The notes: generated by a model from the letters alone, not told the origin. Counted from the first letter of the stretch, positions 9,256 through 49,890 are shown. The stretch is DNA of 64,000 bases from Epithemia pelagica (GCA_946965045.2 OX337242.1:1736001-1800000), one strand, 5' to 3'. Numbers and translations are program-made.

Positions 9256-9799
9256 TTTTTTCTTTCAAAATCAGTTTATCGGCGGTTCTTCAACGATTTG
9301 GAATTTCCCAGCTTTTGATTTTATGAGGAATGTTTCAAACCGATTCATCTTCCGTTGACACAAACAATTCATCAGTTGTGACTTTTCTTACATGTGACTT
9401 TGTTGGCTGGGCCTCATGCCTGCAATGGGATCTCAGTCATTATACGACTCCAATGATCCACATAATCATATGCACCTCCACGCTTGGGACAGGCCCGATA
9501 CTCCGTCTTGGGTGTCTCGGAATGACAGTGTCACTGGTTTCTTTCTCTTTGACAGTGGTCTTGACCGCGGAGAGAAAACGACCTAAGTATCCTTCGGGAT
9601 TATCGGGTTTCGCGAATAAATTGAGAAAACAAAACGGACGCATCCCGGTTGGATCCCAGATTCAATGACTCTGTCAACTCCAAGCGCTATTTTACTACAA
9701 CTGCAGAGCCCTCGGTCGGAGCAGGAGGTTGGTTCCAGTCTGAAGCAAAGAGCAGGGAACTGGAAAACTTGAACGTTCCCAACCAACTTTTGTGTAAGC

Positions 9800-12661
9800 T
9801 CAGGACCATTGTCCCGGGAGTCCTTCGAGTTTGCGTCTCCGTCGTGCCGCTTCGGTTCGGAAAAAGTGTCGGTCCCACAGGGCCTTTTTCCAATACATGA
9901 CGGAGAGCCAGAGTTGGACCCATCGCGATCGACGGGCGTTGGGTTTGGGAACGCCCGTGTGGGTGTAACACAGTCTTCGGTAGGACTCCAACAACGGACG
10001 CGCGGCATCCAGCACATTGTAGGTGGGAAAGGTTTGGCGGGCCAGGCTTTCAATACACAAGACATTGACCACCAAGGTGGCATAATTCGCGTCGATTCGT
10101 ATTTGATACTTTCGAATCAAACCTGGAGAAAGAGAGAAAGAGAAACGAGAAAGCAAACGGAGTGAGCCAAACAGGGGTCTCCTCGAGACGGACATCTCCC
10201 GCAATCGTGACACACACACACACGTACCCAACACTCCGCGAAGGACTTCTCCGACATCGACATTGGTACCATATCCCCGACAGGTGTGTTGAAAGAGGAG
10301 TTGCATGTCGTCGGTAAAGGCTTGTCGGTCGGCGGGAGAAATCCCGTGGTGATTTTCGCGGGAAAACAAGAGGGCAAACTGTGCCGCTTCTCGACCATTT
10401 CCCGATCCCAAACACGACAAGAGTCCAATAAAGACGGAACCTTCTTCGTCCGTCAATTGGGCCACCATTCCGGCATCGACCAAGGTTACCATCATGCCAT
10501 TCTTGCTGGGTCGTCGTCGTCTCCAATGAGGTGGATCCACGACGGCCACGGCCGTTTTACTCGACTCCTTGTTGTGTTGGTGATTGTGATGAAACAAATC
10601 CAACATGATGTTGCCTGATAATCATAGAGAATAACAACAATAATAGTGTCACCACACACAAACTGAGACACGCGTCGTCAACCGTCGTGCTGATCGATTG
10701 TGTTTCCTTGTACGTACCGGGATGCAAATCGGCATGCATGAGATTGTCCACGAGGAGCATTTTCAAGTAAATGCCCACACCGGTCGTGACAATAAAGCGT
10801 GCGACCTCCAAGGGTACCAATTCATGTCCTTGAACATGGGCGGCTGCTTGCGCCATGGCGGCCGTCCATTCGGGCGTCGAATCGTTGGGTTCCTGGACGG
10901 TATAGGCGTCCGGGTCGTCGGGGTGGTGGTCGTCCACTTGCACAATGGTGGGACGACGACTCCAGGGCCAGGATCGTTGTTGTCTTCGTTTTGGATGGGC
11001 CGTGGCGCGTTGTTGCAATTGTTGGGCTTGCACTTGATACTCCTTCAGACACTGGTGACAATGCGTCCCGCTTCAAAGGTTTCAATAATGACCGCGTCCA
11101 AGGCAAAAATGGGATGGGGAAAGTTAACTTGCGGCCAGGCGGCAAAATTGTTATTGAGCAATTCCAAATGATGCGCTTCCACATGCAAATCGGCTTGGGC
11201 AGCCATGGTACTGGAAAATTGATCGACACTTTCCCGCAAGCGCAACCACCGGAGGCCAGGTACCAGACGATCGACCCAGGTGGCCGTCACGGCCATGAGA
11301 CAAAAATCCAATTGCAACAATTCGGCGACGCGGGGATGTCGAATTTTGAGCGCGACCCATTCTTGATTCAACACGGCCCGATGGACTTGGGCAATGGATC
11401 CGGAGGCCAAGGGTTGTGGATCGACCACGTCAAAGACGAGCGGCAAGGTATTGGGGGCCAACTGGAGGGCCTGTTCCAATTCCGATTGGGACCGTTTCCA
11501 GTCATGAGCCGGTGCTTCATTGTGCAATTGACTGAGGGCTTGACAAAAAACGTCGGGAAACATGTCGTTCCGGGTCGATGTCCATTGTCCCCATTTGATA
11601 AAGGCCGCGCCGGAATGGGCCAAACACTGAGTCACCCACGGATACCAACACTGTCGACGAAAGGGTGGACACCAATAGGCCAACCCCACCGTCGACCAGG
11701 CGGGAAAAAATCGCCACGTCAAGGTTACGGCCCGACAGGCCAGTTGCCACACCGACGGCGGTTGCAGACTGCCGGTTTGCCGTTCCTTGTGGAACTGTTG
11801 GGTGAAATTGGAGGAAAAGGGCAAATCTTCCAAATGCAATTGGTCGCGATTGGCCGGAAAGGGATCGTTGGATTTCTTGTTCGGGGAGTGTCTTGTGGGG
11901 GGACTCTCGACTTGTTCCGTGTCGTCGACGGAGGGTTGTGGCACGGCAACGCCATGCGCCGACACGACCGAGGGTTGCTTGTGTTTGTTTTGGCGTTGCA
12001 TCCAGGCGGCGACACGTTTTCCGCGATGTCCCTTGTGCACGTGCTCCAATCGACGGGCCAAAATGTCTTGGACGGCTCGTGCTTGTGCCACGGCTTGCGG
12101 AGACACCGAGGACAACACTGTAGAAGTAGTTGCATCCTGTTGGGTCATGTCGTCATTGTCCTGTTGTCCTCCTCCTCCTCGAAGACCCATTCGTAGAGGG
12201 TGCCGCTGCCATGACAGTGCCTTGTGGTGGTTGTGGTTGTTTGGTGGGAGTGGATGCTGGAGCCGTCTCGCGTCGTGGGTGGACGGAAGGACGGCACCAC
12301 CATCGTTTGGAAAAAGTGAAAGGAGAACTTGTCTGGTTGTGGTACGACACGGCTGGAATACGGACCCTTGCCCTGCAACAAACTCATTCTGGGTTACCAA
12401 CTGTCTCTCCAATGGTCGTTGTTGTGATGGTGGTTCGTTTGTCACTGGTAACGTGGTCCCTCTGAATGTTGCTGTTGTTGTTGTTGCTGTTGTTTGGGTT
12501 CCAAGAGTTGAATCCAGGAGTGTCGTCGTCGTCGTTGCAGTGGCAGCCACCCGCAGATCTACCACCACCAACAGCACACAGACCACCACCCAAACGAGCC
12601 ACTGTCGTTCGCGGGGTGGTGGGAACCGACTACTGCAGCGCTGGATTGTGTGTTGCACCAT
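9800..12661 (-). CDS. ABC1/UbiB (AarF/ADCK) atypical protein kinase, multi-exon, with a 1-nt frameshift at ~11046
   Basis: Motifs AAFIKWGQWTSTRNDMFP, LASGSIAQVHRA, VALKIRHP, MHADLHPG(N) and LVDAGMV are spread over ORFs 11045-12661, 10557-11033 and 9800-10606. The start codon is uncertain. Confidence 0.85.
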
Positions 12662-13161
12662 GTTGCTGCTCTGGTCGTTTGTTGTGTTGGTCTGTTGGCT
12701 CCTTTTTCTCTTTGTCGCAGACCAAAAGCAACGTATTAGGAGTATCTCCTCTATGGATATATTCTAGATCGTCCTCCAAAAGCTGCACGCAGCGAAAGAA
12801 AGTGCCAATGCAAGGAACGTGGATCTTCCGACCCAAACTCCAGCCGCATTGCCATCTGAATACTACTTAGCAGTTTTGGATTCTAAACGGATTAAATATA
12901 TTGGAAGCGTTTATTCGAAAGAAACGTTCAGGATTGTATAATCACAACTCAGAGCGAAAATAAAGATACATTCATAGTATATTATTATGACATTTATATC
13001 AGAACGCTTCGAAGAACCGGCAGTCCAGACCGTGACTGACGTCAGAACTGGATCTTTTTTGGTTTGTGTTGACTCTCTCTCTTTTGTTGTGTTCACAAAA
13101 GAACCATAGACAATTCATCATCTCGTTGGAATCTGGACGTAGTACCTTCTTGTCTGACACC

Positions 13162-13746
13162 ATGAAAGTTTCTCTTGTGTTGGTTTCCTTGGCGTGCTTG
13201 GTGAATGGCTCGGCCGCCTACCAACCGGCCGCTTCTTCGCCAACGACGACTCGTCGTGGGTGGTTCACCCAAGCCGCGGATGCAGCGGCCGTGGTGGGGG
13301 CCACCCTGATTCCAGCTTCGTCAGCTCACGCCCTCGAGGCCTGTCCCAAGAATTCCAAAAATTGCATTCGTACCACCTGGACGCCACCGGCGGACGTCAA
13401 GGACGTGGGTCAATCCCTTGTCAACGTCTTGAATGCCTATCCCCCAGAGGGTCAGGCCGATGTGGACAAGGGTGGTTATACCATTGTGTCCAATTCCTTG
13501 ACCGCCACCAGTGGTTCGGCAACTGTTGAATATAAGAGTGGAATTGGCAATTTTGCCAAATTTTTGAATGGCGGCAAACCCTTTGTCGATGACTTGACGG
13601 TGGAAATTGACGAAACTGGTGTCGTGCAAGTCAAGTCGGCCTCCCGAGTCGGCGATTCGGATTTTGGCGTCAATCAAAAACGATTAACCTACTTGGCCTC
13701 TGCGCTCAAGACCCAAGGATGGACCGTCCCCGATCCAACCTATTAA
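13162..13746 (+). CDS. DUF1499-family protein, probably plastid-targeted
   Basis: CPKNSKNCIRT, FVDDL and VQVKSASRVGDSDFGVNQKRL motifs. Signal peptide followed by SAA-Y (an ASAF-like cleavage motif) and a transit-like segment with TTRRGWF. Confidence 0.8.
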   Translation: MKVSLVLVSLACLVNGSAAYQPAASSPTTTRRGWFTQAADAAAVVGATLIPASSAHALEACPKNSKNCIRTTWTPPADVKDVGQSLVNVLNAYPPEGQADVDKGGYTIVSNSLTATSGSATVEYKSGIGNFAKFLNGGKPFVDDLTVEIDETGVVQVKSASRVGDSDFGVNQKRLTYLASALKTQGWTVPDPTY

Positions 13747-14353
13747 GACACAATCGAACCGTCGTCCCAAACACATACACAGACACACGATACGCAGTTC
13801 CAAGACTCGGGAAGCCCATTGGATCCAACCGATCAGAAACCAAACCAATAAAACCTAGAGGTAGAAAGGAGAATCAACAATTTCCCACAGTGTGTTACTT
13901 TAACTTCATTTGCAATCGTAGAGAGCATGGTTGCATTCCTGCAACTGGTTTTGTAGGCATTGGTGAGACGCCATTCATTGTGTCCGATGTGAGAACATCG
14001 ATAGTCATGGCACAACCCACGCAACACGGCGCAATTCTTGAAGACCCTCCTCTTGGCGAGGCATTCTGCAGCGGTACATCTACAGGAAGCATACATACAC
14101 ATACATGGAACCAAACCAACTTATCACAAGCCGACCACCAGCCGTCTCCTATGGGTGGTGGGCAACAAACCTCTGTCCTTGTATACCGTCTACCTCGAAC
14201 TCTTCTACTCGTTGTTTGCTTCCTTCTCCCATTCTACGGAATGGCCATGACAAGAGAGTACTCGTGACGCAGAATAACGTTTACGCGTTCAAGCTAAGAA
14301 ACGTCTTGACCACAGCATGTATGTATGCCATGGTCGTTGGTGACAGTGGGTGT

Positions 14354-15907
14354 TTAATTGAACACGGGAATGAGAAGTTTGCTGTCCTTGGGAATCTGGA
14401 CACGATGGCCAAAATTGTCTTGGACAAACTCCATCAATTTTCGTCCGGCATGTTCATCACCGTAGTGCGCCAACATGTACTCACGGGGCCGGTACGTGTC
14501 CAGCTGGGCGAGGAAGCTCGTCAAGCTGGGGCGGAAATCGGACATGTTGTGAAAGAATGCACCGGTTTGATTGGTAATGTATTTCCACCCACCCACGATA
14601 TTGTCATTCATCAAGACTGGTACGTTCAACGTCAGGGCTTGCGCGGCAACGCGGGGAGAGGCGTCGTAGATTTGTGGCACGAGGAGGAATCGGCTTTCTC
14701 GCATGTAATCCCATACTTTGGCTTGCGTCAGAAATGGGGTTTGCAGGACACGTCCCTGGCACGACGGTGGAATATCACACGCCTTTCCCGTCTTGGCGTC
14801 CTTGGTCACCAGCAGGACACCTGTCAATTGAAATTCGCCACACAGAACGTCCAACGCGTGGTCCCGAAGAAAGGGCCAGTTTTTGGCATAGGCGCCCCAA
14901 CTGTTGCACGCGCCCGTTTCGGTATTCAAGTCGGACATGGCGTAGACAAAGTCATACTTTTTCAAATGTTTCGCCTCCAAAACCTCCTTTTCGTAGTCAA
15001 TGTCGGGAAGATTAAAGTCCGATTGAGACATGTCCAACACCTTGACATGGTCTGGAAAGTTTGTTTGATTTTCTCGATACATGTTGAGCCATCCGGGGAA
15101 CATGCCAATGTATTTGTCGGGAGAAAACTTGGTCGACCAAGGATTGGGACTGGGATAGGGGAACGCTTCATAACTCATGATACCCAAAAAGAGAATATCA
15201 TTCTTGTATTTCTGGTACAACTGTTCATGGTGCTCGGAATGAAACATGTTGCGAACCAAAATAATGTTGACGTACGTTCCATTCTCATCACTCACGGGTT
15301 GGAAGGGACTCAGTTGGATCAGGTCCTTGTACGCCGGATGAACGTGTTGAGGTTTGCGGTCACAGTGGTTGGTGGTGATATTCCAGCGACACTCTCCGTG
15401 GCACCAAGTCGCCCCGTGACCCATGGGACAGACACTGCAACTCGCCGCCCAATGATTGCCGCAACGGACCGTTTTTCTTGGTTCGCACCGAACACTTGCA
15501 TAATTGAATTGACAATCGACTTCGCCACACGAGGCTGCCATACTACTTGTCGTCGTGCTATTGTCCGGACTGCACTTGTTGCAGCTCGTGGCCGAACGTC
15601 CCCCTCCACAGTGTACCAGGCTCCTGGTAGAAGGAAGGAGCCCTTTGGAAGAGTTGTGGTGAGTGTCGGTATCCAAGAATGTGTGAGAGGATGCATGGCT
15701 GCGAATCCACTCGAGATCTCGGGTCGTCGTTGTCGTCAAAAGGGCGTCGGGTTGCGCGTCGTGCCAGAGGCAAACCGTATTGGACAAGGAGGACAGGGCC
15801 AATACCACAACGAAGCACAACAGGACAGTTCCCTTGTTGACATTATTTTGAAAGCCATGAAGTATATTATTATTTCTCTTGTTGTTGATGGAGAAGTCAC
15901 TCGTCAT
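14354..15907 (-). CDS. Type II membrane putative glycosyltransferase (GT-B-like C-terminus) with two Cys-rich modules
   Basis: N-terminal TM segment VLLCFVVVLALSSL. Cys module CGNHWAASCSVCPMGHGATWCHGECRW. C-terminal SRFLLVPQIYDASPRVAAQALTLNVPVL resembles a GT-B donor-binding region. Confidence 0.6.
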   Translation of the reverse strand: MTSDFSINNKRNNNILHGFQNNVNKGTVLLCFVVVLALSSLSNTVCLWHDAQPDALLTTTTTRDLEWIRSHASSHTFLDTDTHHNSSKGLLPSTRSLVHCGGGRSATSCNKCSPDNSTTTSSMAASCGEVDCQFNYASVRCEPRKTVRCGNHWAASCSVCPMGHGATWCHGECRWNITTNHCDRKPQHVHPAYKDLIQLSPFQPVSDENGTYVNIILVRNMFHSEHHEQLYQKYKNDILFLGIMSYEAFPYPSPNPWSTKFSPDKYIGMFPGWLNMYRENQTNFPDHVKVLDMSQSDFNLPDIDYEKEVLEAKHLKKYDFVYAMSDLNTETGACNSWGAYAKNWPFLRDHALDVLCGEFQLTGVLLVTKDAKTGKACDIPPSCQGRVLQTPFLTQAKVWDYMRESRFLLVPQIYDASPRVAAQALTLNVPVLMNDNIVGGWKYITNQTGAFFHNMSDFRPSLTSFLAQLDTYRPREYMLAHYGDEHAGRKLMEFVQDNFGHRVQIPKDSKLLIPVFN

Positions 15908-16838
15908 GTTTAGGTTGAACTGTCGTCTCATTGTGCTCGATAGAGTGCAAGAAATTCAAAAATGTGAGCACAGTCAGTTGTCGAGTTAGCAATTTGCAAT
16001 CGCCAATCGCCATAATAATAGCGCGTCGACGGGAGACGGGACAAAGACTAAACAAGCTGACAGGCAGACAGGCAGACAGACAGACAGACTCGCCTCGTCC
16101 GCGACCCCCCAACCAGGCGAAACGAAAAGGGGGCAGGGTCTTGAATCACGTGAACGACTGCGCCATGTTGTCGGAGTCGACTCACGGAGCAATTCTCGAT
16201 TATCGCGAGCGTGCATGGCCACATGGGCCTAAGCGAAGCGGTCCACTCAAATTCTCTACGTGACTAAATCTCGTTGTATTTATTGGTGTCTCCGAGCCGT
16301 CCCCACAACGTCGTTCTCAGGCGTAAAAAGCCCACCGACGGTCCCATATGTCCTGTCTCACTTTTTTGGTGGGGCCCTTCCTTTTTTTCGTTGTTGGAGT
16401 TTGTTGCACACATGACGTGTACTTGCCCACAAGATTGAGTTGGTCTCATATCTTGAATTCTTCTCCACACTTTATCAACAGCCAAGAGATCCAGAGCTCG
16501 AATCCCGAACGACGAACTCCAAGGTACGCCAAACGATTCGTCGACGATTGGATGTGTCCAACAGGATGGAGACGAAGCATTTGATTCGTGGAATGAGGCA
16601 TTCCACTCGTACCGATGCTCCTGTTTCGTAAACCTCCAAATCTTTTTGGATGAATGCAGGTGACAAAGAACGAGTTTGAATCCTCATCATTTTTTCATCT
16701 TCTTTCGTTTGTACGAGACAGAGATTCATTGAATCATTTTATCGGTTTGAGACCATGCTGTATCAACACAACAGACGGGCACAAGCCTTGCCACCGAGTG
16801 GTAGTAGTCCTATTCTCCGCACCCCTCGTTGCACTCCC

Positions 16839-42401: not shown

Positions 42402-43113
42402 CGAGATGGGTCACGACTCACACGACGAGAGAAGAAGCAACTTTGCTCCATCACAGCTCTCTGGAACACCACCGATATCTGCAACCAAGGTTCATTTTTC
42501 GGGTCAGCCCCAATCCCGATCAGGGTTGTGAAGTACGCACACTAGCACCAACTACTTGCAGTCTATACTTTAAGTATGGTTCAACCTGTACAATGTACTT
42601 GCTTACTACTACTTTAAGTACATCTAATCAGTGGCTGTACTTCATTTCATATACTTATTCAGTTTTACGTCACTCCAGATTAATGTATGTACTTTACTTT
42701 TGATTAGTACATGTTTCATTAGAGCTCTACTTACTTGACTTAGCCTAAGTACATCTACCAGACACATGTCAGGTACTTACATTACCGTAAGTACATTTGC
42801 ACGATACCATTCACCTTCCTTACTTTCTCTACAAGTCAAGTACCCTTATACATCACGTCTATGTACTTAGAGACAATCATAAGTACATACTTTTAAGTAC
42901 CCAAGTACATACTTTAAGTCGTTACTTTCCACTTACCAGTAGGTATCATATCATAATCCCCATCACTCTAAGAGCACACATTTAGCTAGTAGACCAGTAA
43001 CACCAATCCAACCTAACGCTCACTCACACCATACAGCATACAGCCGGTCATCACAAAGCAGCACTCACTATTCATCATTCTCCCTTTTTGTTGTTGAAGA
43101 AGAAATCAACACC

Positions 43114-44750
43114 ATGTCGATCATCCAACACGAAGGTGACAGTGACAACTCCATTCTTCACTTTACCTCGACCTGTGGCATACAGTCCTCCCTGATCTGC
43201 TGTCAGTCCTACGCTTATTTCATCGCAGACTGTCTGACATCGTGCATATTATCACCACCCAAAGAGCAATTACAATCCATTCTTACCGCCACAGCTTCCT
43301 GGTTGATCCGCCAACAGCGATGGATTGATGTTTCTTCTTCAATCCAATATGAAAATAATCATCCGTGTATCATTTTTCAATACACCTTCGAAGAAGTCCT
43401 TCATCAAGTCGGTTCTCATATGCTTCAGTGGCTGAATGGAGAAGACGATGAAAACCTTGTATCCATTTCAGAAAGCATGGACCCGCTAACATCATACTTG
43501 AATTGAAATGCATACCTCAGTTTGCCGTTTGTGAATGCAAAGGTTGTTTGGAATGCACATCGTTCGTTGTTGGAGAGACAAATGATTTTCCCGAAGGCTC
43601 CATTACCGACCTGATTCTCTTTTGGATCCAACGCAACCAAGCTCATTTTCTTGTAACGGACAACAATTCTGGTAAATCAATGGAGCCTAAGTCACGGGAG
43701 AGTATATTTCCACTTCTATCCCAATATATTGGACGGCAAATCGATACCACAAGGGTATCTCAAGACGCAAGAACCTCCACGGCTTCCAACAACAAGTTCA
43801 GTCGCCACTCCAGTCCGTCTCGACATAAATATCAAACTCGACAACAAAATCATCTTCTATCTCAGGACATTTTACTGAGTTCCAAATCACGGACAAAGCC
43901 ACACTACGATGACGGTCGTCGTTTCAAACACGGAGACCCATTCAAAATATCCCCATGCAGAATTTCCTGTCCCAATCTACCTCTACGTCCTAGTGATTCA
44001 ATCATTGCTGAAAGAGTGACTCTCATTGAAGATCTGAAACAATTCCACGAGATAGCAAAGATGTCTGGGCTACATTCTCCAAGGGACGCTTGGGAGGACT
44101 GGATGGATTGTGGGGCAACAGACAAGCTTGCCGACAAAGCTTTTATGTGTCTCATTATAATTCTTATGAGCTCCAGCACCACCGACAGTCAATTGGCGGC
44201 ATTCATTCCACAAATGTTTTCCAGTGGACTTACATCAGCGGACGGTGTAATAGAGGTATCACAGCGGATTGGAATGGATGCCTTTTGTGCCCTCATCTCT
44301 CCAGTTGGTCGATTCCACCAAAATGCAGAAAGAATTGTACATGCGGCATCTTATTTTGTTGTCAAACACAAAGGCCGCATTCCATCTGATATATCCATCC
44401 GAGAACTCACCTCTTTATTCGGAATTGGATACAAGACAGCACAGATCATTGTCTCAAGTGCATTCGGTCGAATGGACGGAATTCCTTCGGATGTCCACGT
44501 CATTCGCTGGTGTGAGGCACTCAAATGGGTGCCACCACTTGCAAATGACGGTCTCCTTTGTTCCAAGTGCATTGAACAATGGCTGCCTAAATCCAAATGG
44601 CATCTTATCAATCCACTTTTTGGGGCGTTTGGTCAGCTCATTCAAAATCCTGATACACGGCCACCTCTCTTGAGCCTATTGGAGGAGAAGGCTTCGGATC
44701 TGTTGAAATCTGTCTTTCTCAAAATGCTGAAGGCATATGGCAAAAACTAA
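43114..44750 (+). CDS. HhH-GPD DNA glycosylase/AP lyase, endonuclease III (Nth)-like, lacking the C-terminal 4Fe-4S motif; transposon cargo; 1-nt frameshift at ~43503
   Basis: LIIILMSSSTTDSQL (cf. Nth LIAVLLSAQATD), GRFHQNAERI, HhH motif LTSLFGIGYKTAQII with catalytic Lys (44433), IPSDVHVIRW with catalytic Asp (44490), and LPKSKWHLINPLFGAFGQ. The upstream ORF 43114-43506 begins at caccATG and joins in frame if one T is added at aat-tga. Confidence 0.87.
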
Positions 44751-45016
44751 TTCTTCTAATATATAGATTTTTACGGTACTTCGTACACTACCCTTCACAA
44801 TTTCATTCACTCGCTGAATCTTTGGCCTCATCTTCTTCCCTATTGTCGTTATCGCCCGTGTCATCCCTCTCGCCTTCGTTACTATACTCTGCGTCTGAAT
44901 CATTTTCCTCACTGTGGCTATCACCGACGACTTTATTCAACATATGCTCCAAGTTACTTGCCACATTTTCCTCTGTGTCAGAGCCGGCCTCTGAATCTTG
45001 AACCCGTACCGCCGAC

Positions 45017-48000
45017 TCAGGAGTTGCACCTTTCTTCTTCTTTGCCCTGGGTGAGCGTCGGACTTTGCTGTGATTCTCTATCCTCTTTGGACTTTATCCG
45101 GGATGATGGTTTTTTCTTAGACCCGCTTTTGGAACCTGTGGACTTGAGTTTGGTTTGTTTTGCTTTCTTTTGGACAGGTGGTGTCTCATTCGCTTTTCTC
45201 TTCTTTGAACCACTCCCACTTGTTCCAGTAGTCGGCTCAGCATTCGTGCCTTTGTCTTTGTCTTTGCTTGCCGCTCTTTTCTTCTTTTCTTCCGCTGCCA
45301 GTTTTCTTGATTTCTCTAAGCAATCGAGCCGTTTGATTTCTTCTCGTAGATGAAAAGTTATGGCCTCGTCGTTGTCAATATCTTCATCTTCGACAACGGA
45401 TTTGTCCTCCTCATTGTCACTTACATCCGACAAGTCAATCTTCACCACTTGAATGTCGTCAGCTGTCATGGGAACTTCGGCTTCCCCTTCTCCGTCGCCC
45501 AGATCAGGGAAATATTCATAGGTTGGATCGGGAGAGTTCGTTGCAAGAGGGTCTTGTTCAGACGACTTCTTCGCTTTGGAGTTGAAGTCGTCCAAAGCCT
45601 CGGTGGCTTTCATTAGCAACATGTTGCGAAGATACTCGGCTTGCTCCGTGTCTTCGAACAAATGCGGAGTCTTCTTCTTCTCATTACCGATTGCTGTTGC
45701 ATGTGACGGATCAGTATCCTGTGTATTGGACGGTGTATCATCAGTGTTTCCGACCTCGCTTGCCTGGACCTCGGTTGCCTGTTTCGCCACATTGCCTGTA
45801 TCCGTGGACGTTCCCCCAGTGCTGGTTGCAGTCTCTGCAGTCTTCTCCACCGCCTCGTCGTCATCATCATCGTCGATGGCGATCACTTCTGCTTCCCGTT
45901 TCTTATTCTCAATAGCAATCTCTCGTTGGACAATCTCGAGGCGAATCTTTCTGGTTAATTTCTCCATCGCCCTCATCTCGAAATTCTTGGCTGTTGTTTT
46001 GGATTGAAGTTTGTCTTGTTGAAACCAGGAACCGAGTGAAAATACTCGTTCCTGAAAAGCATTAGTGACAGGCTTTGTAAGCCAAATCACAGCCGATGGG
46101 AACACGTGGGGAAAATTGTCCTTGTTGTGATCCCACCACGCCATTACATCAAAATACTTGCCAACCACTAAGAAGTCTCGGTCCTGACAAGCCAACAGGA
46201 ACCTGGATTTGTCAGCCGGTTTCCACTTTTTATAGTCGTTCGTGTAGGCTTCTGTTGGGTATTTGGCAATGACCTCGTTCCATTTAGTGTCAATGTCCCG
46301 CTTGCAAGCCCGACGAAAATCGCGCAAACTATCTTCACAAGTCTGTTTCAGCACTTTGGCTATTCGAGATTCTTCATCGGCAAGCGAGGCCTTTCCCGTT
46401 ATACTCAACAATGCACGTTCATTGAGTTCTTGGGACTCCCTGAACGCACGGAATGGGTTGAATTTTTGGAACGGCATATTCGTTGTGGTGGAAGTATTGG
46501 TGTTTTGTTCAGGTGGAGACGTTGTGGTGGTCGAGTGAGACGTCGTAGTGCCCGTCGTAGTGCTGGTAGTTTGTTGGGCTTGTTTTGATAACAAGGAACC
46601 GATTGTTGAATAAGCCTTGTTGCTGAACTTTTTGACCATGTCCTTCAAGAAAAGGTCCTTTACTCGATTGGCATCATTTTGGTCATACACACCCAGCGAC
46701 TGGAAGAATTTCCCAAACATATTTGTTGTCAACGGGTGTGCCATCAAGGCCTTTTCAGAATCATCGTTGAGAGAGCCACCATCGTCTCTTTTGCGTCGAC
46801 CTTCCACCAAAAGTGTCTTGAATTCCGCGAGAATCCGACAGATAAGTTTGCGTGGTCCACTTTTCAAGTCCTTGAAAGACATTCCCACTCTTTCCAATTG
46901 GGGAATAGTTTTGTCCCCATTCCATCTCTTGTCTCTTGGTGTTGTAAGCGTCACAGGGAGACATCCAATTGCTTCTTTCGTAGTTTGCATCCGGTGTGTG
47001 TGAGCACGGGCAAGATAGATCTGCATTAGGGCCGCAGACGACGAACCTGGTTCGTCCGATTGGATAGAGATAGAAGCCTCTTGCAAAACAACAAGAATGG
47101 CCTCGTACTGTGCGAGTAATTCCCATTTGTCTTGATCGGGATAGTTGTCCTTGAAATCCGGATCAGTACCGAAGTTTCGATTGACATAGTCATCGAAACA
47201 CCATTTGTTCCGTAGTAGATACTGTATTGTCAACACGCATCCACTCACTCGAGTCTCGTTGGGTAATGGGATTTGAACTACGGACTGGTTCATGCGTTCC
47301 ATGTCCTCTCGCACATTGTCAAAGCGATGGTTGGCTTTTTTGGACATCAACCAGGCGGCAAACTTTTTGAATTCGGTGTACAGTTCCACAAAGCTCTTGT
47401 TGTCGTCAATAATTTCCTTGTTCTTGGTCCTTACCACTAACCCCGTGGCATGCTTTAAGACCAATTCGGCCTTATGCATGTCGCATTTGCCCACAGCCGA
47501 AGAACTCGTAATGTATTTCCCCGCCAACACTGCCGAAGCAGTGTTGTCGTTGACCGAGGAACATAGGTCAGTTTTGTGAAACCCCACCGTCTGGAGCAAC
47601 GAGTGGGTTAGCTTGGCGACTTGTACAGCAGTATGGCCTTTGGTTTGTGCCAACCCAATCGGGATCCGGTATATGGCGCAATTCCGAGGGTCGCAAAACA
47701 TTACCGTGACTCCAAGGACATCATATTGTTTTGCCTGCCACACATCGTGACATACCGTTGCGAACGGTATTTCTTGTCGACAAATCTTTTTATAGTGTTG
47801 ACGAACACGGAAAGAGAGCTTCGATATAGTTCGGATAAACTCTTGGTACGATGTGACTCGCATAGACGTCACTTCCCGTCGACTGAGTTTTTCCGGTTGG
47901 GATTTGCGAAGAAGGTTGGCGTTTTTGATTGCGAAATCAATCATCTTCCGAAACTCTGGTTTCTCCACAATGGAGGCGGGTAGACAGCAATCGTTGACAC

Positions 48001-48655
48001 ATTGGTAAATGTGTTGTTGCATTTGTTGTCGAATGGTTTTCTTCGTAATCATGCCCGAACCATCACGGAACATGGTCATCTTTGTCTGGGTGGTGCCTTG
48101 TTCCGGTTCACTTTGTGCTTGTGCATCTTCTTTCGTACCAGGAATGACGAAGTCCTTATGATTACTGTCTGTATGTTGCTTGATGTTGGAGGGCCTGCTA
48201 CGACTTAGCATGATGATAGCGTTGCTCAAAGGAGTGTCTGGGTTTTGTAGGCAGAGAGGACATAGAACACATCTCTTAGTGACGACGGAAAAAGGAAGTA
48301 GCTTCTCAGTTTTGTTGGGAGAGGACTTCTTCGCAAGTTGCTCCTGTTCTTCTTGTGCGGCCTTGAACGTGTCATTGATGCGTTGGAATCCTTTGTACAT
48401 TTCAAGGTTTTGTGGGTCATGTGAGGAAATAAAATTTGAGAATTGGGGCCAGTCGATGTGCACAGCAAATTTCCAAAGGGGTGACAAGTTTTGGTGACCA
48501 AAATGATCGGGCGGCGGCTGTTGGAACTTAGGAACAATGTCCTTTTCGCTTTGGAGGAAAGAGCGGTGGGCTTTCTGCTTTTCGGCATGAACCTTCTCGG
48601 ATTGCTTCTTCTCAGCGGCACGGGTTGCTTTGGATTTTTTCTGACGAGGGGCCAT
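45017..48655 (-). CDS. hAT transposase (~1212 aa), uninterrupted
   Basis: BED-like zinc finger CVLCPLC...SNIKQHTDSNH; LPASIVEKPEF; catalytic D (CHDVW), D (VNDNT) and E (AFQERVFS); CxxH motif (CDMH); ETRVSG; dimerisation region DVMAWWDHNKDNFP. Confidence 0.93.
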   Translation of the reverse strand: MAPRQKKSKATRAAEKKQSEKVHAEKQKAHRSFLQSEKDIVPKFQQPPPDHFGHQNLSPLWKFAVHIDWPQFSNFISSHDPQNLEMYKGFQRINDTFKAAQEEQEQLAKKSSPNKTEKLLPFSVVTKRCVLCPLCLQNPDTPLSNAIIMLSRSRPSNIKQHTDSNHKDFVIPGTKEDAQAQSEPEQGTTQTKMTMFRDGSGMITKKTIRQQMQQHIYQCVNDCCLPASIVEKPEFRKMIDFAIKNANLLRKSQPEKLSRREVTSMRVTSYQEFIRTISKLSFRVRQHYKKICRQEIPFATVCHDVWQAKQYDVLGVTVMFCDPRNCAIYRIPIGLAQTKGHTAVQVAKLTHSLLQTVGFHKTDLCSSVNDNTASAVLAGKYITSSSAVGKCDMHKAELVLKHATGLVVRTKNKEIIDDNKSFVELYTEFKKFAAWLMSKKANHRFDNVREDMERMNQSVVQIPLPNETRVSGCVLTIQYLLRNKWCFDDYVNRNFGTDPDFKDNYPDQDKWELLAQYEAILVVLQEASISIQSDEPGSSSAALMQIYLARAHTHRMQTTKEAIGCLPVTLTTPRDKRWNGDKTIPQLERVGMSFKDLKSGPRKLICRILAEFKTLLVEGRRKRDDGGSLNDDSEKALMAHPLTTNMFGKFFQSLGVYDQNDANRVKDLFLKDMVKKFSNKAYSTIGSLLSKQAQQTTSTTTGTTTSHSTTTTSPPEQNTNTSTTTNMPFQKFNPFRAFRESQELNERALLSITGKASLADEESRIAKVLKQTCEDSLRDFRRACKRDIDTKWNEVIAKYPTEAYTNDYKKWKPADKSRFLLACQDRDFLVVGKYFDVMAWWDHNKDNFPHVFPSAVIWLTKPVTNAFQERVFSLGSWFQQDKLQSKTTAKNFEMRAMEKLTRKIRLEIVQREIAIENKKREAEVIAIDDDDDDEAVEKTAETATSTGGTSTDTGNVAKQATEVQASEVGNTDDTPSNTQDTDPSHATAIGNEKKKTPHLFEDTEQAEYLRNMLLMKATEALDDFNSKAKKSSEQDPLATNSPDPTYEYFPDLGDGEGEAEVPMTADDIQVVKIDLSDVSDNEEDKSVVEDEDIDNDEAITFHLREEIKRLDCLEKSRKLAAEEKKKRAASKDKDKGTNAEPTTGTSGSGSKKRKANETPPVQKKAKQTKLKSTGSKSGSKKKPSSRIKSKEDRESQQSPTLTQGKEEERCNS

Positions 48656-49256
48656 GGTGAACTGAATCGATTGGACTGGTTGGCTGTTGGATGTTGGCTG
48701 TTGGCTGCTGTCGAAAATTATGAGACTCACAACAGAGAGCGATGGATGAAGATGCAACAGAGGTGAATGTGAATGTGTGTATGTATATGAGGCAATGGCG
48801 ATGATCACTCATGTGCTGTCAAAAAGATTTACGTGCCTGCGAAGCGTGAGAGAAGAATGAGAGAATGTGGGTACTTCGAGGATTCAGAGACGTACCTATG
48901 GACTTAGAAGTAGTAGAATACCATTAAGAGTACTTACTTCTGGTGCTTTAAGTAACACAGGGGGGTGGGTAGTACTTGATACGGTTACTTAAAGTATCAG
49001 AAAAATTAGCAAGTACTTGCGATGGGTACTTACAAGGAAGCGATAAGATGAGCGGTACTTGCGGTGGGGTACTTAAGGTGGTACAGGAAAATATAGGTAC
49101 TTTTTGGTGAGGACATAGGGAAAGGAAAGTACATGGCGAAGAGAAGAGGGACTTGGACCAAGGAAAGTCATAAAGTACGCGAAAAGTAGTACTTTTGGAA
49201 AAAATAGGTACTTGGTACTTCACAACCCTGATCCCGATGCGTAAAATGGCTTCAAC

Positions 49257-49890
49257 GCATCTCGTCACGCCGGCATAATCACTATAAATCACTATCGTAA
49301 ATTTTGTAGGATACGGTTGTATGTACGTTATTCTAGTCTTGAATAAGCTTATGTATTCGAACATCCACAAGACTATTTAAGAATGAGAAAAATCTAGCGA
49401 GCGAGCCTGCGTCGTGGTTTTTGTATCCATCGGATACAAAATATGTATAAAATGTATCCAATGGATACATGGGTACAACTGGGGACAAAGGGGGTACAGT
49501 TCGTTCAAAAGGGTACATAGTTCATCCTTCGCCTAATGTACCCCTGTATCCGTTTTGTACAAAAGGATACGTATTTTATCATATTTGGTAAATATGGACC
49601 TAACGGATGACTGACAGGTTCATATTTTGGGTTGCATCTCGTCACGCCGGCAAAATCACTGAAACTCACTGTAAATATTGTAGGACTATTTAAAATCTAG
49701 CGAGCGAGCCTGCGTCGTGGTTTTTGTATCCATCGGATACAAAATATGTATAAAATGTATCCAATGGATACATGGGGACAACTGGGGACAAAGGGGGTAC
49801 AGTTCGTTCAAAAGGGTACGAGTACATAGTTCATCCTTCGCCGAATGTACCCCAGATTTGGTCCTGTATCCGTTTTGTACAAAAGGATAC
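49257..49890. repeat. Two imperfect direct copies (~300 bp) rich in short palindromes
   Basis: The core AAAATCTAGCGAGCGAGCC...AAAAGGGTAC at 49388-49514 is repeated at 49692-49819. Each copy contains TGTATCCATCGGATACA, TGTATCCAATGGATACA and GTATCC...GGATAC palindromes. Confidence 0.9.

What the first reader, a model, noticed from the sequence alone, without database searches (positions are those of the whole stretch)
42521..49230. hAT transposon carrying its own endonuclease III / HhH-GPD DNA glycosylase gene
Seen: one element bounded by perfect 16-bp TIRs and a perfect 8-bp TSD contains an intact hAT transposase (minus strand) and a convergent second gene (plus strand) with an HhH-GPD fold. 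That gene retains the Nth catalytic Lys and Asp. Known: autonomous hAT elements typically encode only a transposase; HhH-GPD enzymes include Nth, MutY, MIG/MBD4 and the plant 5mC demethylases DEMETER/ROS1; other transposons carry anti-silencing cargo (VANC in VANDAL elements; TET/JBP genes associated with KDZ transposons); diatom TEs are CG-methylated. Inference: this may be a transposon-encoded base-excision module that removes 5mC or T:G mismatches from the element (anti-silencing), or that helps resolve lesions or hairpins at excision sites. I know of no described hAT-glycosylase family.
Basis: partly seen in the sequence, partly recalled or inferred. Interest (0 to 1): 0.92.

Follow-up and report, generated by a model that had tools for sequence, protein, structure and literature searches.

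The report
Jumping gene carrying a DNA-repair enzyme
A cut-and-paste transposon of a probable diatom has carried its own endonuclease III-like DNA base-excision enzyme through long evolution, which suggests the element edits or repairs its own DNA, perhaps to escape silencing; the copy in this window is slightly broken.

Summary
Window 42521-49230 is a hAT transposon with perfect 16-bp inverted ends and an 8-bp target duplication (ATCCCGAT). It carries a hAT transposase on the minus strand and a convergent gene for an NTH1/endonuclease III-like glycosylase with the catalytic Lys and Asp.

This copy is not intact. Compared with 97%-identical sister copies, a 1-nt deletion at 43481 splits the ~545-aa glycosylase ORF into 130 + 415 aa. 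A 1-nt insertion near 45064 shifts the frame of the transposase tail.

The cargo is not a one-off. I found the same two-gene layout in six more complete elements of the same assembly, each with its own 8-bp duplication. It also appears in one complete and three partial elements from environmental contigs. About 41 representative clusters at 50% identity exist.

- Lys and Asp are invariant across the family.
- The Fe-S cluster motif is absent in all members.
- dN/dS is about 0.1-0.25.
- The glycosylase and transposase trees are compatible.
- A duplicated N-terminal module of unknown fold is also conserved.

No paper describing a hAT-glycosylase family was found. The biochemical role (anti-silencing, lesion repair or transposition cofactor) is untested, and no RNA evidence was obtained.

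The scan had already noted this family about 45 times elsewhere in this genome. One earlier follow-up reached the same conclusion.

The parts
42513..42520 (.). Left copy of the 8-bp target-site duplication, ATCCCGAT
   Evidence: identical to 49231-49238.
42521..42536 (+). Left terminal inverted repeat, CAGGGTTGTGAAGTAC
   Evidence: 0 mismatches. The same TIR bounds L001, L002 and L004a.
42521..43113 (+). Left subterminal region with clustered AAGTAC/GTACTT hexamers. Presumed transposase-binding sites, and the promoter and 5' leader of the glycosylase gene.
   Evidence: 27 of the element's 28 AAGTAC/GTACTT hexamers lie in the two subterminal regions (1168 of 6710 nt). The promoter role is inferred.
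43114..44750 (+). Accessory gene: tandem N-terminal module, basic linker and clusterless NTH1-like glycosylase/AP lyase. In this copy the frame is broken at 43481 (ORFs 43114-43506 and 43503-44750).
   Evidence: Intact sisters are single ORFs of 543 aa (P0001; L001 8700-10331).
43147..43750 (+). N-terminal domain: two homologous ~100-aa alpha/beta modules, each with an invariant Trp. The fold has no significant solved match. The best weak likeness is the diatom domain DUF6824 and winged-helix-like domains. Coordinates are approximate.
   Evidence: AF2 pLDDT 89, pTM 0.74. hhalign of the two halves gives probability 93-95%, E 4e-8. Fold searches.
43989..44747 (+). HhH-GPD (NTH1/endonuclease III-like) catalytic domain. 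Catalytic Lys codon at 44433-44435 (GIGYKTA) and Asp codon at 44490-44492 (PSDVHV). No Cys4 Fe-S motif.
44751..45016 (-). Short spacer between the convergent genes, followed by the out-of-frame remnant of the transposase C-terminal tail. In intact copies the two stop codons are 52 nt apart.
45017..48655 (-). hAT transposase ORF as it stands (1212 aa from the ATG at 48655). Sister copies are 1282-1284 aa. The frameshift is near 45064.
   Evidence: Motif positions: BED-like finger 48158-48271; D 47738-47752; D 47534-47551; CxxH 47474-47485; E 46037-46054; the PF05699 match covers residues 833-875.
48656..49214 (-). Right subterminal region with AAGTAC/GTACTT hexamers. Presumed promoter and leader of the transposase gene. 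Contains the single AGTAGAAT (48912-48919) that is the duplicated target of a nested insertion in locus L004.
49215..49230 (-). Right terminal inverted repeat
49231..49238 (.). Right copy of the target-site duplication, ATCCCGAT

Best explanation
Shown (about 0.95): this is one copy, with two frameshifts, of a multi-copy two-gene hAT DNA transposon family of a probable diatom.
- Each element is 6.1-7.1 kb, with short CAG-type inverted ends, an 8-bp target duplication and AAGTAC subterminal repeats.
- The transposase is read inward from one end.
- A ~545-600-aa accessory protein is read inward from the other end. It consists of a duplicated ~100-aa N-terminal module, a basic linker and an NTH1-like HhH-GPD glycosylase/AP lyase. 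That domain keeps the Schiff-base Lys and the catalytic Asp but has lost the Fe-S cluster.
- The accessory gene is an old, selected component of the element, not a recent pick-up.

Inferred (about 0.4, the most likely of several mechanisms): the enzyme performs base excision on the element's own DNA to keep it active. It would remove 5-methylcytosine, or an oxidised or deaminated derivative, from the ends and promoters, so that host base-excision repair restores unmodified C. This would be an anti-silencing function.

More speculative: the tandem N-terminal module supplies the targeting, for example to the subterminal repeats or to the transposase.
For: Anatomy.

Linkage:
- The glycosylase is convergent with a 1227-1300-aa hAT transposase in L001-L005. 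This gives six further complete elements with TSDs ATATGGAC, GTTACCAG, CTTGTGAT, CTCATGAC, AGTAGAAT and CCCGATAG.
- The same layout occurs in environmental contigs L006 (complete, TSD ACTTAAGT), L007, L012 and the P0084 contig.
- The window and L001 hold the unoccupied target of the nested element in L004.

Selection:
- dN/dS is about 0.11 between subfamilies that are 62% identical.
- Within the window's subfamily it is 0.21-0.28 (p = 0.001), the same as the transposase (0.24).
- By region it is about 0.18 for the N-domain and about 0.09 for the catalytic domain.
- About 50 of about 60 listed gene copies are full length.

Catalysis: Lys and Asp are invariant in 16 sequences that share only 31-64% identity with the first (P0001).

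Fold: the best structural matches are human NTHL1 and EndoIII-DNA complexes.

Co-descent:
- The two gene trees share all well-supported groups.
- The glycosylase data do not reject the transposase topology (AU p = 0.072).
- The TE glycosylases form one clade (SH-aLRT 99), apart from canonical Nth/NTH1.

Analogy: fungal DNA transposons, hAT among them, carry TET/JBP dioxygenases that are proposed to remove silencing marks (PMC12730594).
Against: - No substrate, expression or methylation data were obtained. The runs found were collapsed DNA contigs.
- By profile the enzyme is nearest to NTH1, an oxidised-pyrimidine glycosylase. DEMETER/ROS1, MBD4 and MutY are not retrieved at E <= 0.01.
- CpG observed/expected in the elements is 0.69-0.86, against 0.75-0.97 in the flanks. 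This neither shows nor excludes methylation-driven decay.
- The targeting role of the N-domain rests on weak fold likeness only (Z < 5).
- The host is taken to be a diatom from a feature-based match of one neighbouring gene, not from a marker gene.
Confidence: 0.45

Rival explanations
1. Transposition cofactor. The glycosylase/AP lyase, or just its DNA-binding surface, works with the transposase at the donor or target. It could process or nick DNA at the ends, help repair the hairpinned donor flanks or the 8-nt gaps, or tether the transpososome. On this view it is needed for movement, not for escaping silencing.
For: - Strict one-to-one linkage and compatible trees of the two genes.
- Similar strength of selection on both genes.
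- All glycosylase-linked transposases are unusually long (1208-1365 aa), with a ~400-aa charged tail. A related 905-aa hAT has no glycosylase nearby.
Against: - Studied hAT elements (Ac, Hermes, Tol2) transpose with the transposase alone (general knowledge).
- A relative of the transposase exists without the gene (L011).
- No interaction evidence was obtained.
Confidence: 0.25
2. Self-repair against mutational decay. The enzyme removes oxidised or deaminated pyrimidines (thymine glycol, 5-OH-C, U:G or T:G from 5mC deamination) from element DNA. This would slow the C-to-T erosion that methylated repeats suffer.
For: - The nearest relatives are NTH1/EndoIII, whose known substrates are oxidised pyrimidines.
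- A bifunctional Lys/Asp active site is conserved.
- About 80% of copies keep full-length ORFs despite within-cluster divergence.
Against: - A diffusible repair enzyme benefits the whole genome, so selection at the level of the element is hard to explain unless the enzyme is targeted.
- The elements are slightly more CpG-depleted than most of their flanks, not less.
- Transitions still dominate the differences between copies.
Confidence: 0.2
3. Non-catalytic regulator. The protein acts mainly as a DNA-binding or chromatin-recruiting factor for the element, like VANC or MURB-type accessory proteins, and glycosylase chemistry is dispensable.
For: - The conserved, duplicated N-terminal module and basic linker are under selection (dN/dS about 0.18-0.3).
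- The Fe-S cluster loop, which helps Nth bind DNA, is lost.
Against: - The catalytic Lys and Asp and most of the active-site signature are invariant across members that share only 31-64% identity with the first (P0001).
- The catalytic domain is the most constrained part of the protein (dN/dS about 0.09).
Confidence: 0.05
4. Neutral passenger or artefact. On this view the gene is a recently captured host NTH1 fragment decaying inside one element, or the host's own NTH1 that an assembly error has placed between chance inverted repeats.
For: The window copy itself carries two frameshifts.
Against: - Eight complete elements have eight different TSDs.
- There are dozens of full-length copies in at least 13 clusters at 90% identity.
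- Purifying selection is clear.
- The TE glycosylases form a clade separate from canonical NTH1.
- The layout is present in independent metagenomes.
Confidence: 0.02

Closest known systems
hAT superfamily DNA transposons (Ac, Hermes, Tol2, hobo)
   Same: - 8-bp TSD and short TIRs starting with CAG.
- Subterminal hexamer repeats.
- A transposase with a BED-like finger, DDE and CxxH motifs, and the PF05699 C-terminal dimerisation domain.
   Different: - A second, conserved, convergently transcribed gene for a DNA glycosylase.
- A transposase about twice the usual length, with a ~400-aa charged C-terminal tail.
Endonuclease III / NTH1 (E. coli Nth, human NTHL1; PDB 2abk, 1p59, 7rds)
   Same: - HhH-GPD fold.
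- The Lys in the helix-hairpin-helix and the Asp about 19 residues on.
- The eukaryotic NTH1-like signature up to the ...W..IN.L..FGQ motif.
   Different: - No C-x6-C-x2-C-x5-C [4Fe-4S] motif in any member.
- MLSSQT becomes MSSSTxD (Gln to Ser).
- A family-specific RDxWExW helix in front of the domain, a basic linker and a ~200-aa duplicated N-terminal domain.
- Encoded by a transposon, in dozens of copies.
DEMETER/ROS1 5-methylcytosine glycosylases of plants
   Same: Bifunctional HhH-GPD enzymes descended from Nth-like ancestors. This is the functional model for demethylation by base excision.
   Different: - Those enzymes keep the Fe-S cluster, have a split catalytic domain and have extra C-terminal domains.
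- None of these features was found here, and they are not retrieved by the family profile.
- They are host genes, not TE cargo.
TET/JBP dioxygenase genes carried by fungal DNA transposons (KDZ, hAT, Helitron and others; PMC12730594), and VANC of Arabidopsis VANDAL21
   Same: A DNA transposon that carries, beside its transposase, a gene plausibly directed at DNA methylation. The gene is inherited with the element.
   Different: An unrelated protein fold and chemistry (base excision, against oxidation or sequence-specific hypomethylation). The host lineage also differs (a probable diatom).
MuDR of maize (mudrA and mudrB, convergent, each driven from a TIR)
   Same: A two-gene DNA transposon with convergent genes read inward from the two ends.
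   Different: A different superfamily. MURB is not an enzyme of known chemistry.

Membership tests
hAT superfamily transposon | 8-bp target-site duplication | tested here: met
   Window: ATCCCGAT on both sides. Seven further complete elements each have their own perfect 8-bp TSD.
hAT superfamily transposon | Short terminal inverted repeats (typically 10-25 bp, often starting with CAG or TAG) | tested here: met
   A 16-bp perfect TIR, CAGGGTTGTGAAGTAC. Sister subfamilies have CAGGGTGTGGAAGT and CAGAGTTGGGTAGTAC. The metagenomic element L006 starts with GAG.
hAT superfamily transposon | Transposase with the hAT C-terminal dimerisation domain (PF05699) | tested here: met
   28.3 bits against a gathering score of 21.4 in the window. 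Sister copies score 25.8-28.8 bits. There is a weak match to Hermes over the same stretch.
hAT superfamily transposon | DDE catalytic residues in the D..W, DN(A/T)xS and ..ER.FS contexts, a CxxH motif and an N-terminal BED-type zinc finger | tested here: met
   Read directly in the translation: CHDVW, NDNTAS, CDMH, QERVFS and CVLC...HTDSNH. Assigning these motifs to catalytic roles rests on general knowledge of hAT transposases. It was not tested on a structural alignment.
Endonuclease III / NTH1 (HhH-GPD) | HhH-GPD fold | tested here: met
   Foldseek's best hits are 7rds, 7rdt, 1orn and 1p59, with TM by target 0.44-0.75. phmmer against NTHL1 gives E 1e-17 and the family profile gives 8e-22. 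Pfam PF00730 is above its cut-off in P0011 and below it in this copy.
Endonuclease III / NTH1 (HhH-GPD) | Catalytic Lys in the HhH motif and catalytic Asp (bifunctional glycosylase/AP lyase) | tested here: met
   K439 and D458 (P0001 numbering) are invariant in 16 diverse members and align to the Lys and Asp of NTHL1.
Endonuclease III / NTH1 (HhH-GPD) | C-terminal [4Fe-4S] cluster ligated by C-x6-C-x2-C-x5-C | tested here: not met
   No family member has the motif. 44 of the 98 Nth-like outgroup sequences placed in the domain tree do.
Endonuclease III / NTH1 (HhH-GPD) | Excision of oxidised pyrimidines, with beta-elimination | not testable with these tools
   This needs an enzyme assay.
DEMETER/ROS1 5mC glycosylases | Fe-S cluster, a bipartite glycosylase domain with a long insert, and conserved C-terminal domains | tested here: not met
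   There is no Cys4 motif. The catalytic domain is contiguous in the model. No DME or ROS1 chain is retrieved by the profile at E <= 0.01.
DEMETER/ROS1 5mC glycosylases | 5-methylcytosine excision activity | not testable with these tools
   This needs an enzyme assay or a methylome.
MBD4 / MIG-type mismatch glycosylases | Monofunctional: no catalytic Lys in the HhH motif. MBD4 has an MBD domain and MIG has an Fe-S cluster. | tested here: not met
   The Lys is invariant. Pfam finds no MBD domain. There is no Fe-S motif.

The most novel reading that the evidence does not exclude
A transposon-encoded, clusterless NTH1-derived glycosylase acts as a self-targeted DNA demethylase. Its duplicated DUF6824-like N-terminal module would guide it to the element's AAGTAC subterminal repeats, where it excises 5mC (or a derivative) and keeps both inward-facing promoters active. 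This would be an independent invention of DEMETER/ROS1-like demethylation, made by a selfish element in diatoms.
Probability: 0.3. Interest if true: 0.92.

Novelty: new variant of a known kind. Interest (0 to 1): 0.8.

Why it matters
DNA transposons are known to carry anti-silencing cargo of two kinds: VANC in plants and TET/JBP dioxygenases in fungi. A base-excision enzyme kept by a hAT lineage through deep divergence would add a third route. It would also be the first in diatoms, whose transposons are reported to be CG-methylated.

The finding gives a concrete, testable handle on the conflict between transposons and host over DNA modification in an ecologically dominant algal group.

It offers a compact NTH1-type enzyme without an Fe-S cluster, and with a new DNA-targeting-like domain, for biochemistry and possibly for epigenome-editing tools.

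It also shows that 'endonuclease III' annotations in diatom assemblies and benthic metagenomes can be transposon genes present in dozens of copies.

Tried and rejected
1. An intron joining the 130-aa and 415-aa ORFs. Rejected: sister copies have one continuous 543-aa ORF, and the difference is a single-base indel.
2. RNA evidence. Both run searches returned the same three runs of unknown kind. Laid on the element, they were collapsed genomic contigs (longest 509 kb) that carry the family consensus. This gave no transcript information and no verdict on the frameshifts.
3. A scan of metagenome contigs with the family alignment. 116 pattern matches were found, none confirmed.
4. CpG depletion as a proxy for methylation or protection. 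The differences are small and uninformative.
5. The fold of the N-terminal domain.
   - Foldseek against PDB gave no hit with E < 0.1.
   - VIA-align gave Z < 5, with scattered winged-helix-like domains.
   - AFDB and the ESM atlas gave only partial DUF6824 likeness.
   - Pfam found nothing.
   - No paper mentions DUF6824.
6. Host NTH1 or assembly artefact. Rejected (see the rival explanations).
7. Membership in DME/ROS1, MBD4/MIG or MutY. Not supported.
8. A second glycosylase-bearing locus type (L013-L016). Its two ~1300-aa neighbours have no Pfam match and no similarity to the hAT transposase or to each other. No TIRs were seen. Left open.
9. A clean empty-site reconstruction for the nested element in L004. 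It is only partly clean, because a further ~770-bp insertion abuts the left TSD copy.


Full report
**1. The observation**

The stretch 42521-49230 is bounded by CAGGGTTGTGAAGTAC and its exact reverse complement. These are the only two matches in the window, even when 3 mismatches are allowed. The eight bases outside each end are both ATCCCGAT.

Of the 28 AAGTAC/GTACTT hexamers in the element, 27 lie in the 1168 nt of the two subterminal regions.

The long minus-strand ORF (45017-48655 from its ATG) reaches Pfam's threshold for the hAT dimerisation domain. Read directly, it shows a BED-like CxxC...HxxxxH finger and the motifs CHDVW, NDNTAS, CDMH and QERVFS, which mark the hAT DDE/CxxH core. 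Assigning those motifs to catalytic roles rests on general knowledge.

The plus-strand ORF 43503-44750 aligns to human NTHL1 at E 1e-17. Its GIGYKTA Lys and PSDVHV Asp lie on the catalytic Lys and Asp.

**2. A correction: this copy is not intact**

A second copy, L001, is 97.2% identical over exactly the element and has different flanks.
- Compared with it, the window lacks one C in a C-run at 43481. This splits a continuous ~545-aa ORF (ATG at 43114) into 130 + 415 aa.
- The window also has one extra base near 45064, which shifts the last ~70 codons of the transposase.
- The split ORFs are recorded as such in the public assembly (P0027 and P0028).
- The three public runs that hold the element gave only collapsed contigs with the family consensus. 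They neither confirm nor refute the two indels, and they give no RNA evidence.

**3. The cargo travels with the element**

A protein search found 26 relatives. An exhaustive profile search found 41 representatives (at 50% identity) with E < 1e-30. After these there is a clear gap down to ordinary Nth/NTH1.

Every genomic context with enough flank shows the same layout: the glycosylase gene, then a convergent ~1200-1365-aa hAT transposase.
- L001, L002, L003, L005 and two elements in L004, all from one assembly.
- L006 and L012, from two sediment metagenomes.
- L007, from a JGI metagenome.
- The contig of the divergent member P0084.

Complete elements and their TIR/TSD pairs:

| Element | TSD | Note |
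|---|---|---|
| L001 | ATATGGAC | |
| L002 | GTTACCAG | |
| L003 | CTTGTGAT | TIR CAGGGTGTGGAAGT |
| L004a | CTCATGAC | |
| L004b | AGTAGAAT | nested in L004a |
| L005 | CCCGATAG | |
| L006 | ACTTAAGT | |

The window copy and L001 carry a single AGTAGAAT at the site where L004b sits. They are therefore the unoccupied target, although an extra ~770-bp insertion abuts it in L004.

Cluster listings show at least 60 gene copies in at least 13 clusters at 90% identity on large contigs. About 50 of them are full length.

A related 905-aa hAT transposase from another assembly is 39% identical and has 205 cluster members. It has no glycosylase within 6 kb. The cargo therefore marks a sublineage, not all relatives.

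**4. Selection and co-descent**

- Between the window's subfamily and the 62%-identical one, dN = 0.275 and dS >= 2.4, so omega is about 0.11.
- By region, omega is about 0.18 for the N-domain, below 0.3 for the linker and about 0.09 for the catalytic domain.
- Within the window's subfamily, omega is 0.21-0.28 (binomial p = 0.001). The transposase gives the same value, 0.24.
- In an alignment of 16 members that share only 31-64% identity with the first (P0001), the Lys, the Asp and about 55 other positions are invariant.
- Trees of the two genes from eight elements share all well-supported groups. They differ only in the place of one long branch.
- The glycosylase data do not reject the transposase topology (AU p = 0.072). 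The reverse constraint is rejected (p = 0.0015), so a single old capture followed by co-inheritance is adequate.
- In a tree of the catalytic domain with about 100 nearest outsiders, 27 family representatives form one clade (SH-aLRT 99). It is separate from the canonical Nth/NTH1 clade (87 rows, SH-aLRT 98).

**5. What the protein is**

The AlphaFold model (pLDDT 79) has three parts: an N-terminal alpha/beta domain (residues 14-209), a disordered basic linker, and a helical domain (241-540).

The catalytic domain:
- Its best structural matches are human NTHL1 and the Geobacillus EndoIII-DNA complexes.
- The family profile hits NTHL1 at 8e-22 and then bacterial EndoIII. No DME/ROS1, MBD4 or MutY chain appears at E <= 0.01.
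- No member has the C-x6-C-x2-C-x5-C Fe-S motif. 44 of the 98 outgroup sequences in the domain tree have it.
- It is therefore a clusterless enzyme, presumably bifunctional, derived from NTH1.

The N-terminal domain:
- Modelled alone it is confident (pLDDT 89, pTM 0.74).
- It is a tandem duplication. The two halves match profile to profile at 93-95% probability, E 4e-8, and the invariant Trp63 and Trp169 are equivalent.
- No solved structure matches it significantly. The only recurring likeness is to DUF6824, an uncharacterised domain common in diatoms, and weakly to winged-helix-type DNA binders.
- This is a lead, not a result.

**6. Host**

A neighbouring host gene in L002 best matches a cluster in which diatoms are the commonest phylum (score 0.97). 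The environmental members come from sediment and biofilm samples. 'Diatom' is thus likely but was not proven here.

**7. Mechanism**

Shown:
- a mobile hAT family;
- a conserved, selected, catalytically equipped accessory glycosylase;
- two genes read inward from the two ends, with stop codons about 52 nt apart.

Inferred: what the enzyme does. I rank the possibilities as follows.

| Mechanism | Probability |
|---|---|
| Anti-silencing by excision of 5mC or a derivative | about 0.4 |
| Cofactor of transposition or of repair at donor and target | about 0.25 |
| Self-repair of oxidised or deaminated bases | about 0.2 |
| Non-catalytic regulator | about 0.05 |
| Passenger or artefact | about 0.02 |

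The first is favoured for three reasons. Selection on an element-borne enzyme implies a benefit private to the element. Other transposons carry methylation-directed cargo (PMC12730594; VANC, from general knowledge). DME/ROS1 show that Nth-type enzymes can evolve 5mC excision. The main point against it is that by sequence the enzyme is closest to ordinary NTH1.

**8. Novelty**

Full-text searches gave no description of a hAT, or any DNA transposon, that encodes an HhH-GPD glycosylase.
- The terms were combinations of hAT, transposon, glycosylase, diatom, 'transposon-encoded', 'DNA glycosylase', 'endonuclease III' and 'second ORF'.
- The combination HhH-GPD + 'DNA transposon' + transposase returned zero papers.
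- None of the family members whose sources were listed comes from NCBI, UniRef or MMETSP records.
- The search covers open-access papers only. Repbase reports could not be checked.

The scan itself has flagged this family about 45 times on other DNA of this genome. One earlier follow-up (s1-226339) reached the same conclusion.

**9. Verdict**

This is a real two-gene hAT family with a new class of cargo, well supported by comparative evidence. The window's own copy is a mildly degraded member, and the function is still open. Novelty: a new variant of a known kind. Interest: 0.8.

Noticed in passing
L013 3835-14445 (also L014, L015, L016): A different clusterless HhH-GPD protein (796 aa, P0096/P0203) recurs with identical sequence in four JGI metagenomes. 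It lies between a 1338-aa ORF on the same strand and a convergent 1312-aa ORF. Neither neighbour has a Pfam match, or any similarity to the hAT transposase or to the other. No TIRs were seen. This may be a second kind of mobile element with a glycosylase.
   Followed up: partly
window 46172-46174 (from the laid contigs): Contigs of all three runs break off here into foreign sequence: ...GTAGTGTGCAGT on one side and CACTGCACACATC... on the other, which are inverted ends. The two break points are 3 bp apart. This looks like a CACTA/EnSpm-type element inserted in another copy of this hAT family in the sequenced strain.
   Followed up: no
L004 2301-16710: Nested insertions. A subfamily-5 element (9467-16392, TSD AGTAGAAT) and an adjacent ~770-bp unidentified insert (8689-~9458) sit in the right subterminal region of a subfamily-1 element. 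That host element still has its own TIRs and the TSD CTCATGAC.
   Followed up: partly
L011 6001-8718 (assembly ERZ25042306): A related hAT transposase of only 905 aa (39% identical). Its cluster has 205 member sequences and no glycosylase gene lies within 6 kb. It is a possible cargo-free sister lineage in another genome.
   Followed up: partly
window 49389-49800: Just outside the element, a 109-nt unit repeats at 303-nt spacing (99% identical). It contains paired palindromes, TGTATCCATCGGATACA and TGTATCCAATGGATACA.
   Followed up: no
window 45017-46030 (transposase residues ~876-1212): All glycosylase-linked transposases have a ~400-aa tail after the dimerisation domain, rich in acidic and basic runs. 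This makes them about twice the usual hAT length. The function is unknown.
   Followed up: no
window 44751-44802 and L001 10332-10383: In intact copies the two convergent genes stop only about 52 nt apart. Their 3' ends probably overlap, which could yield double-stranded RNA.
   Followed up: no
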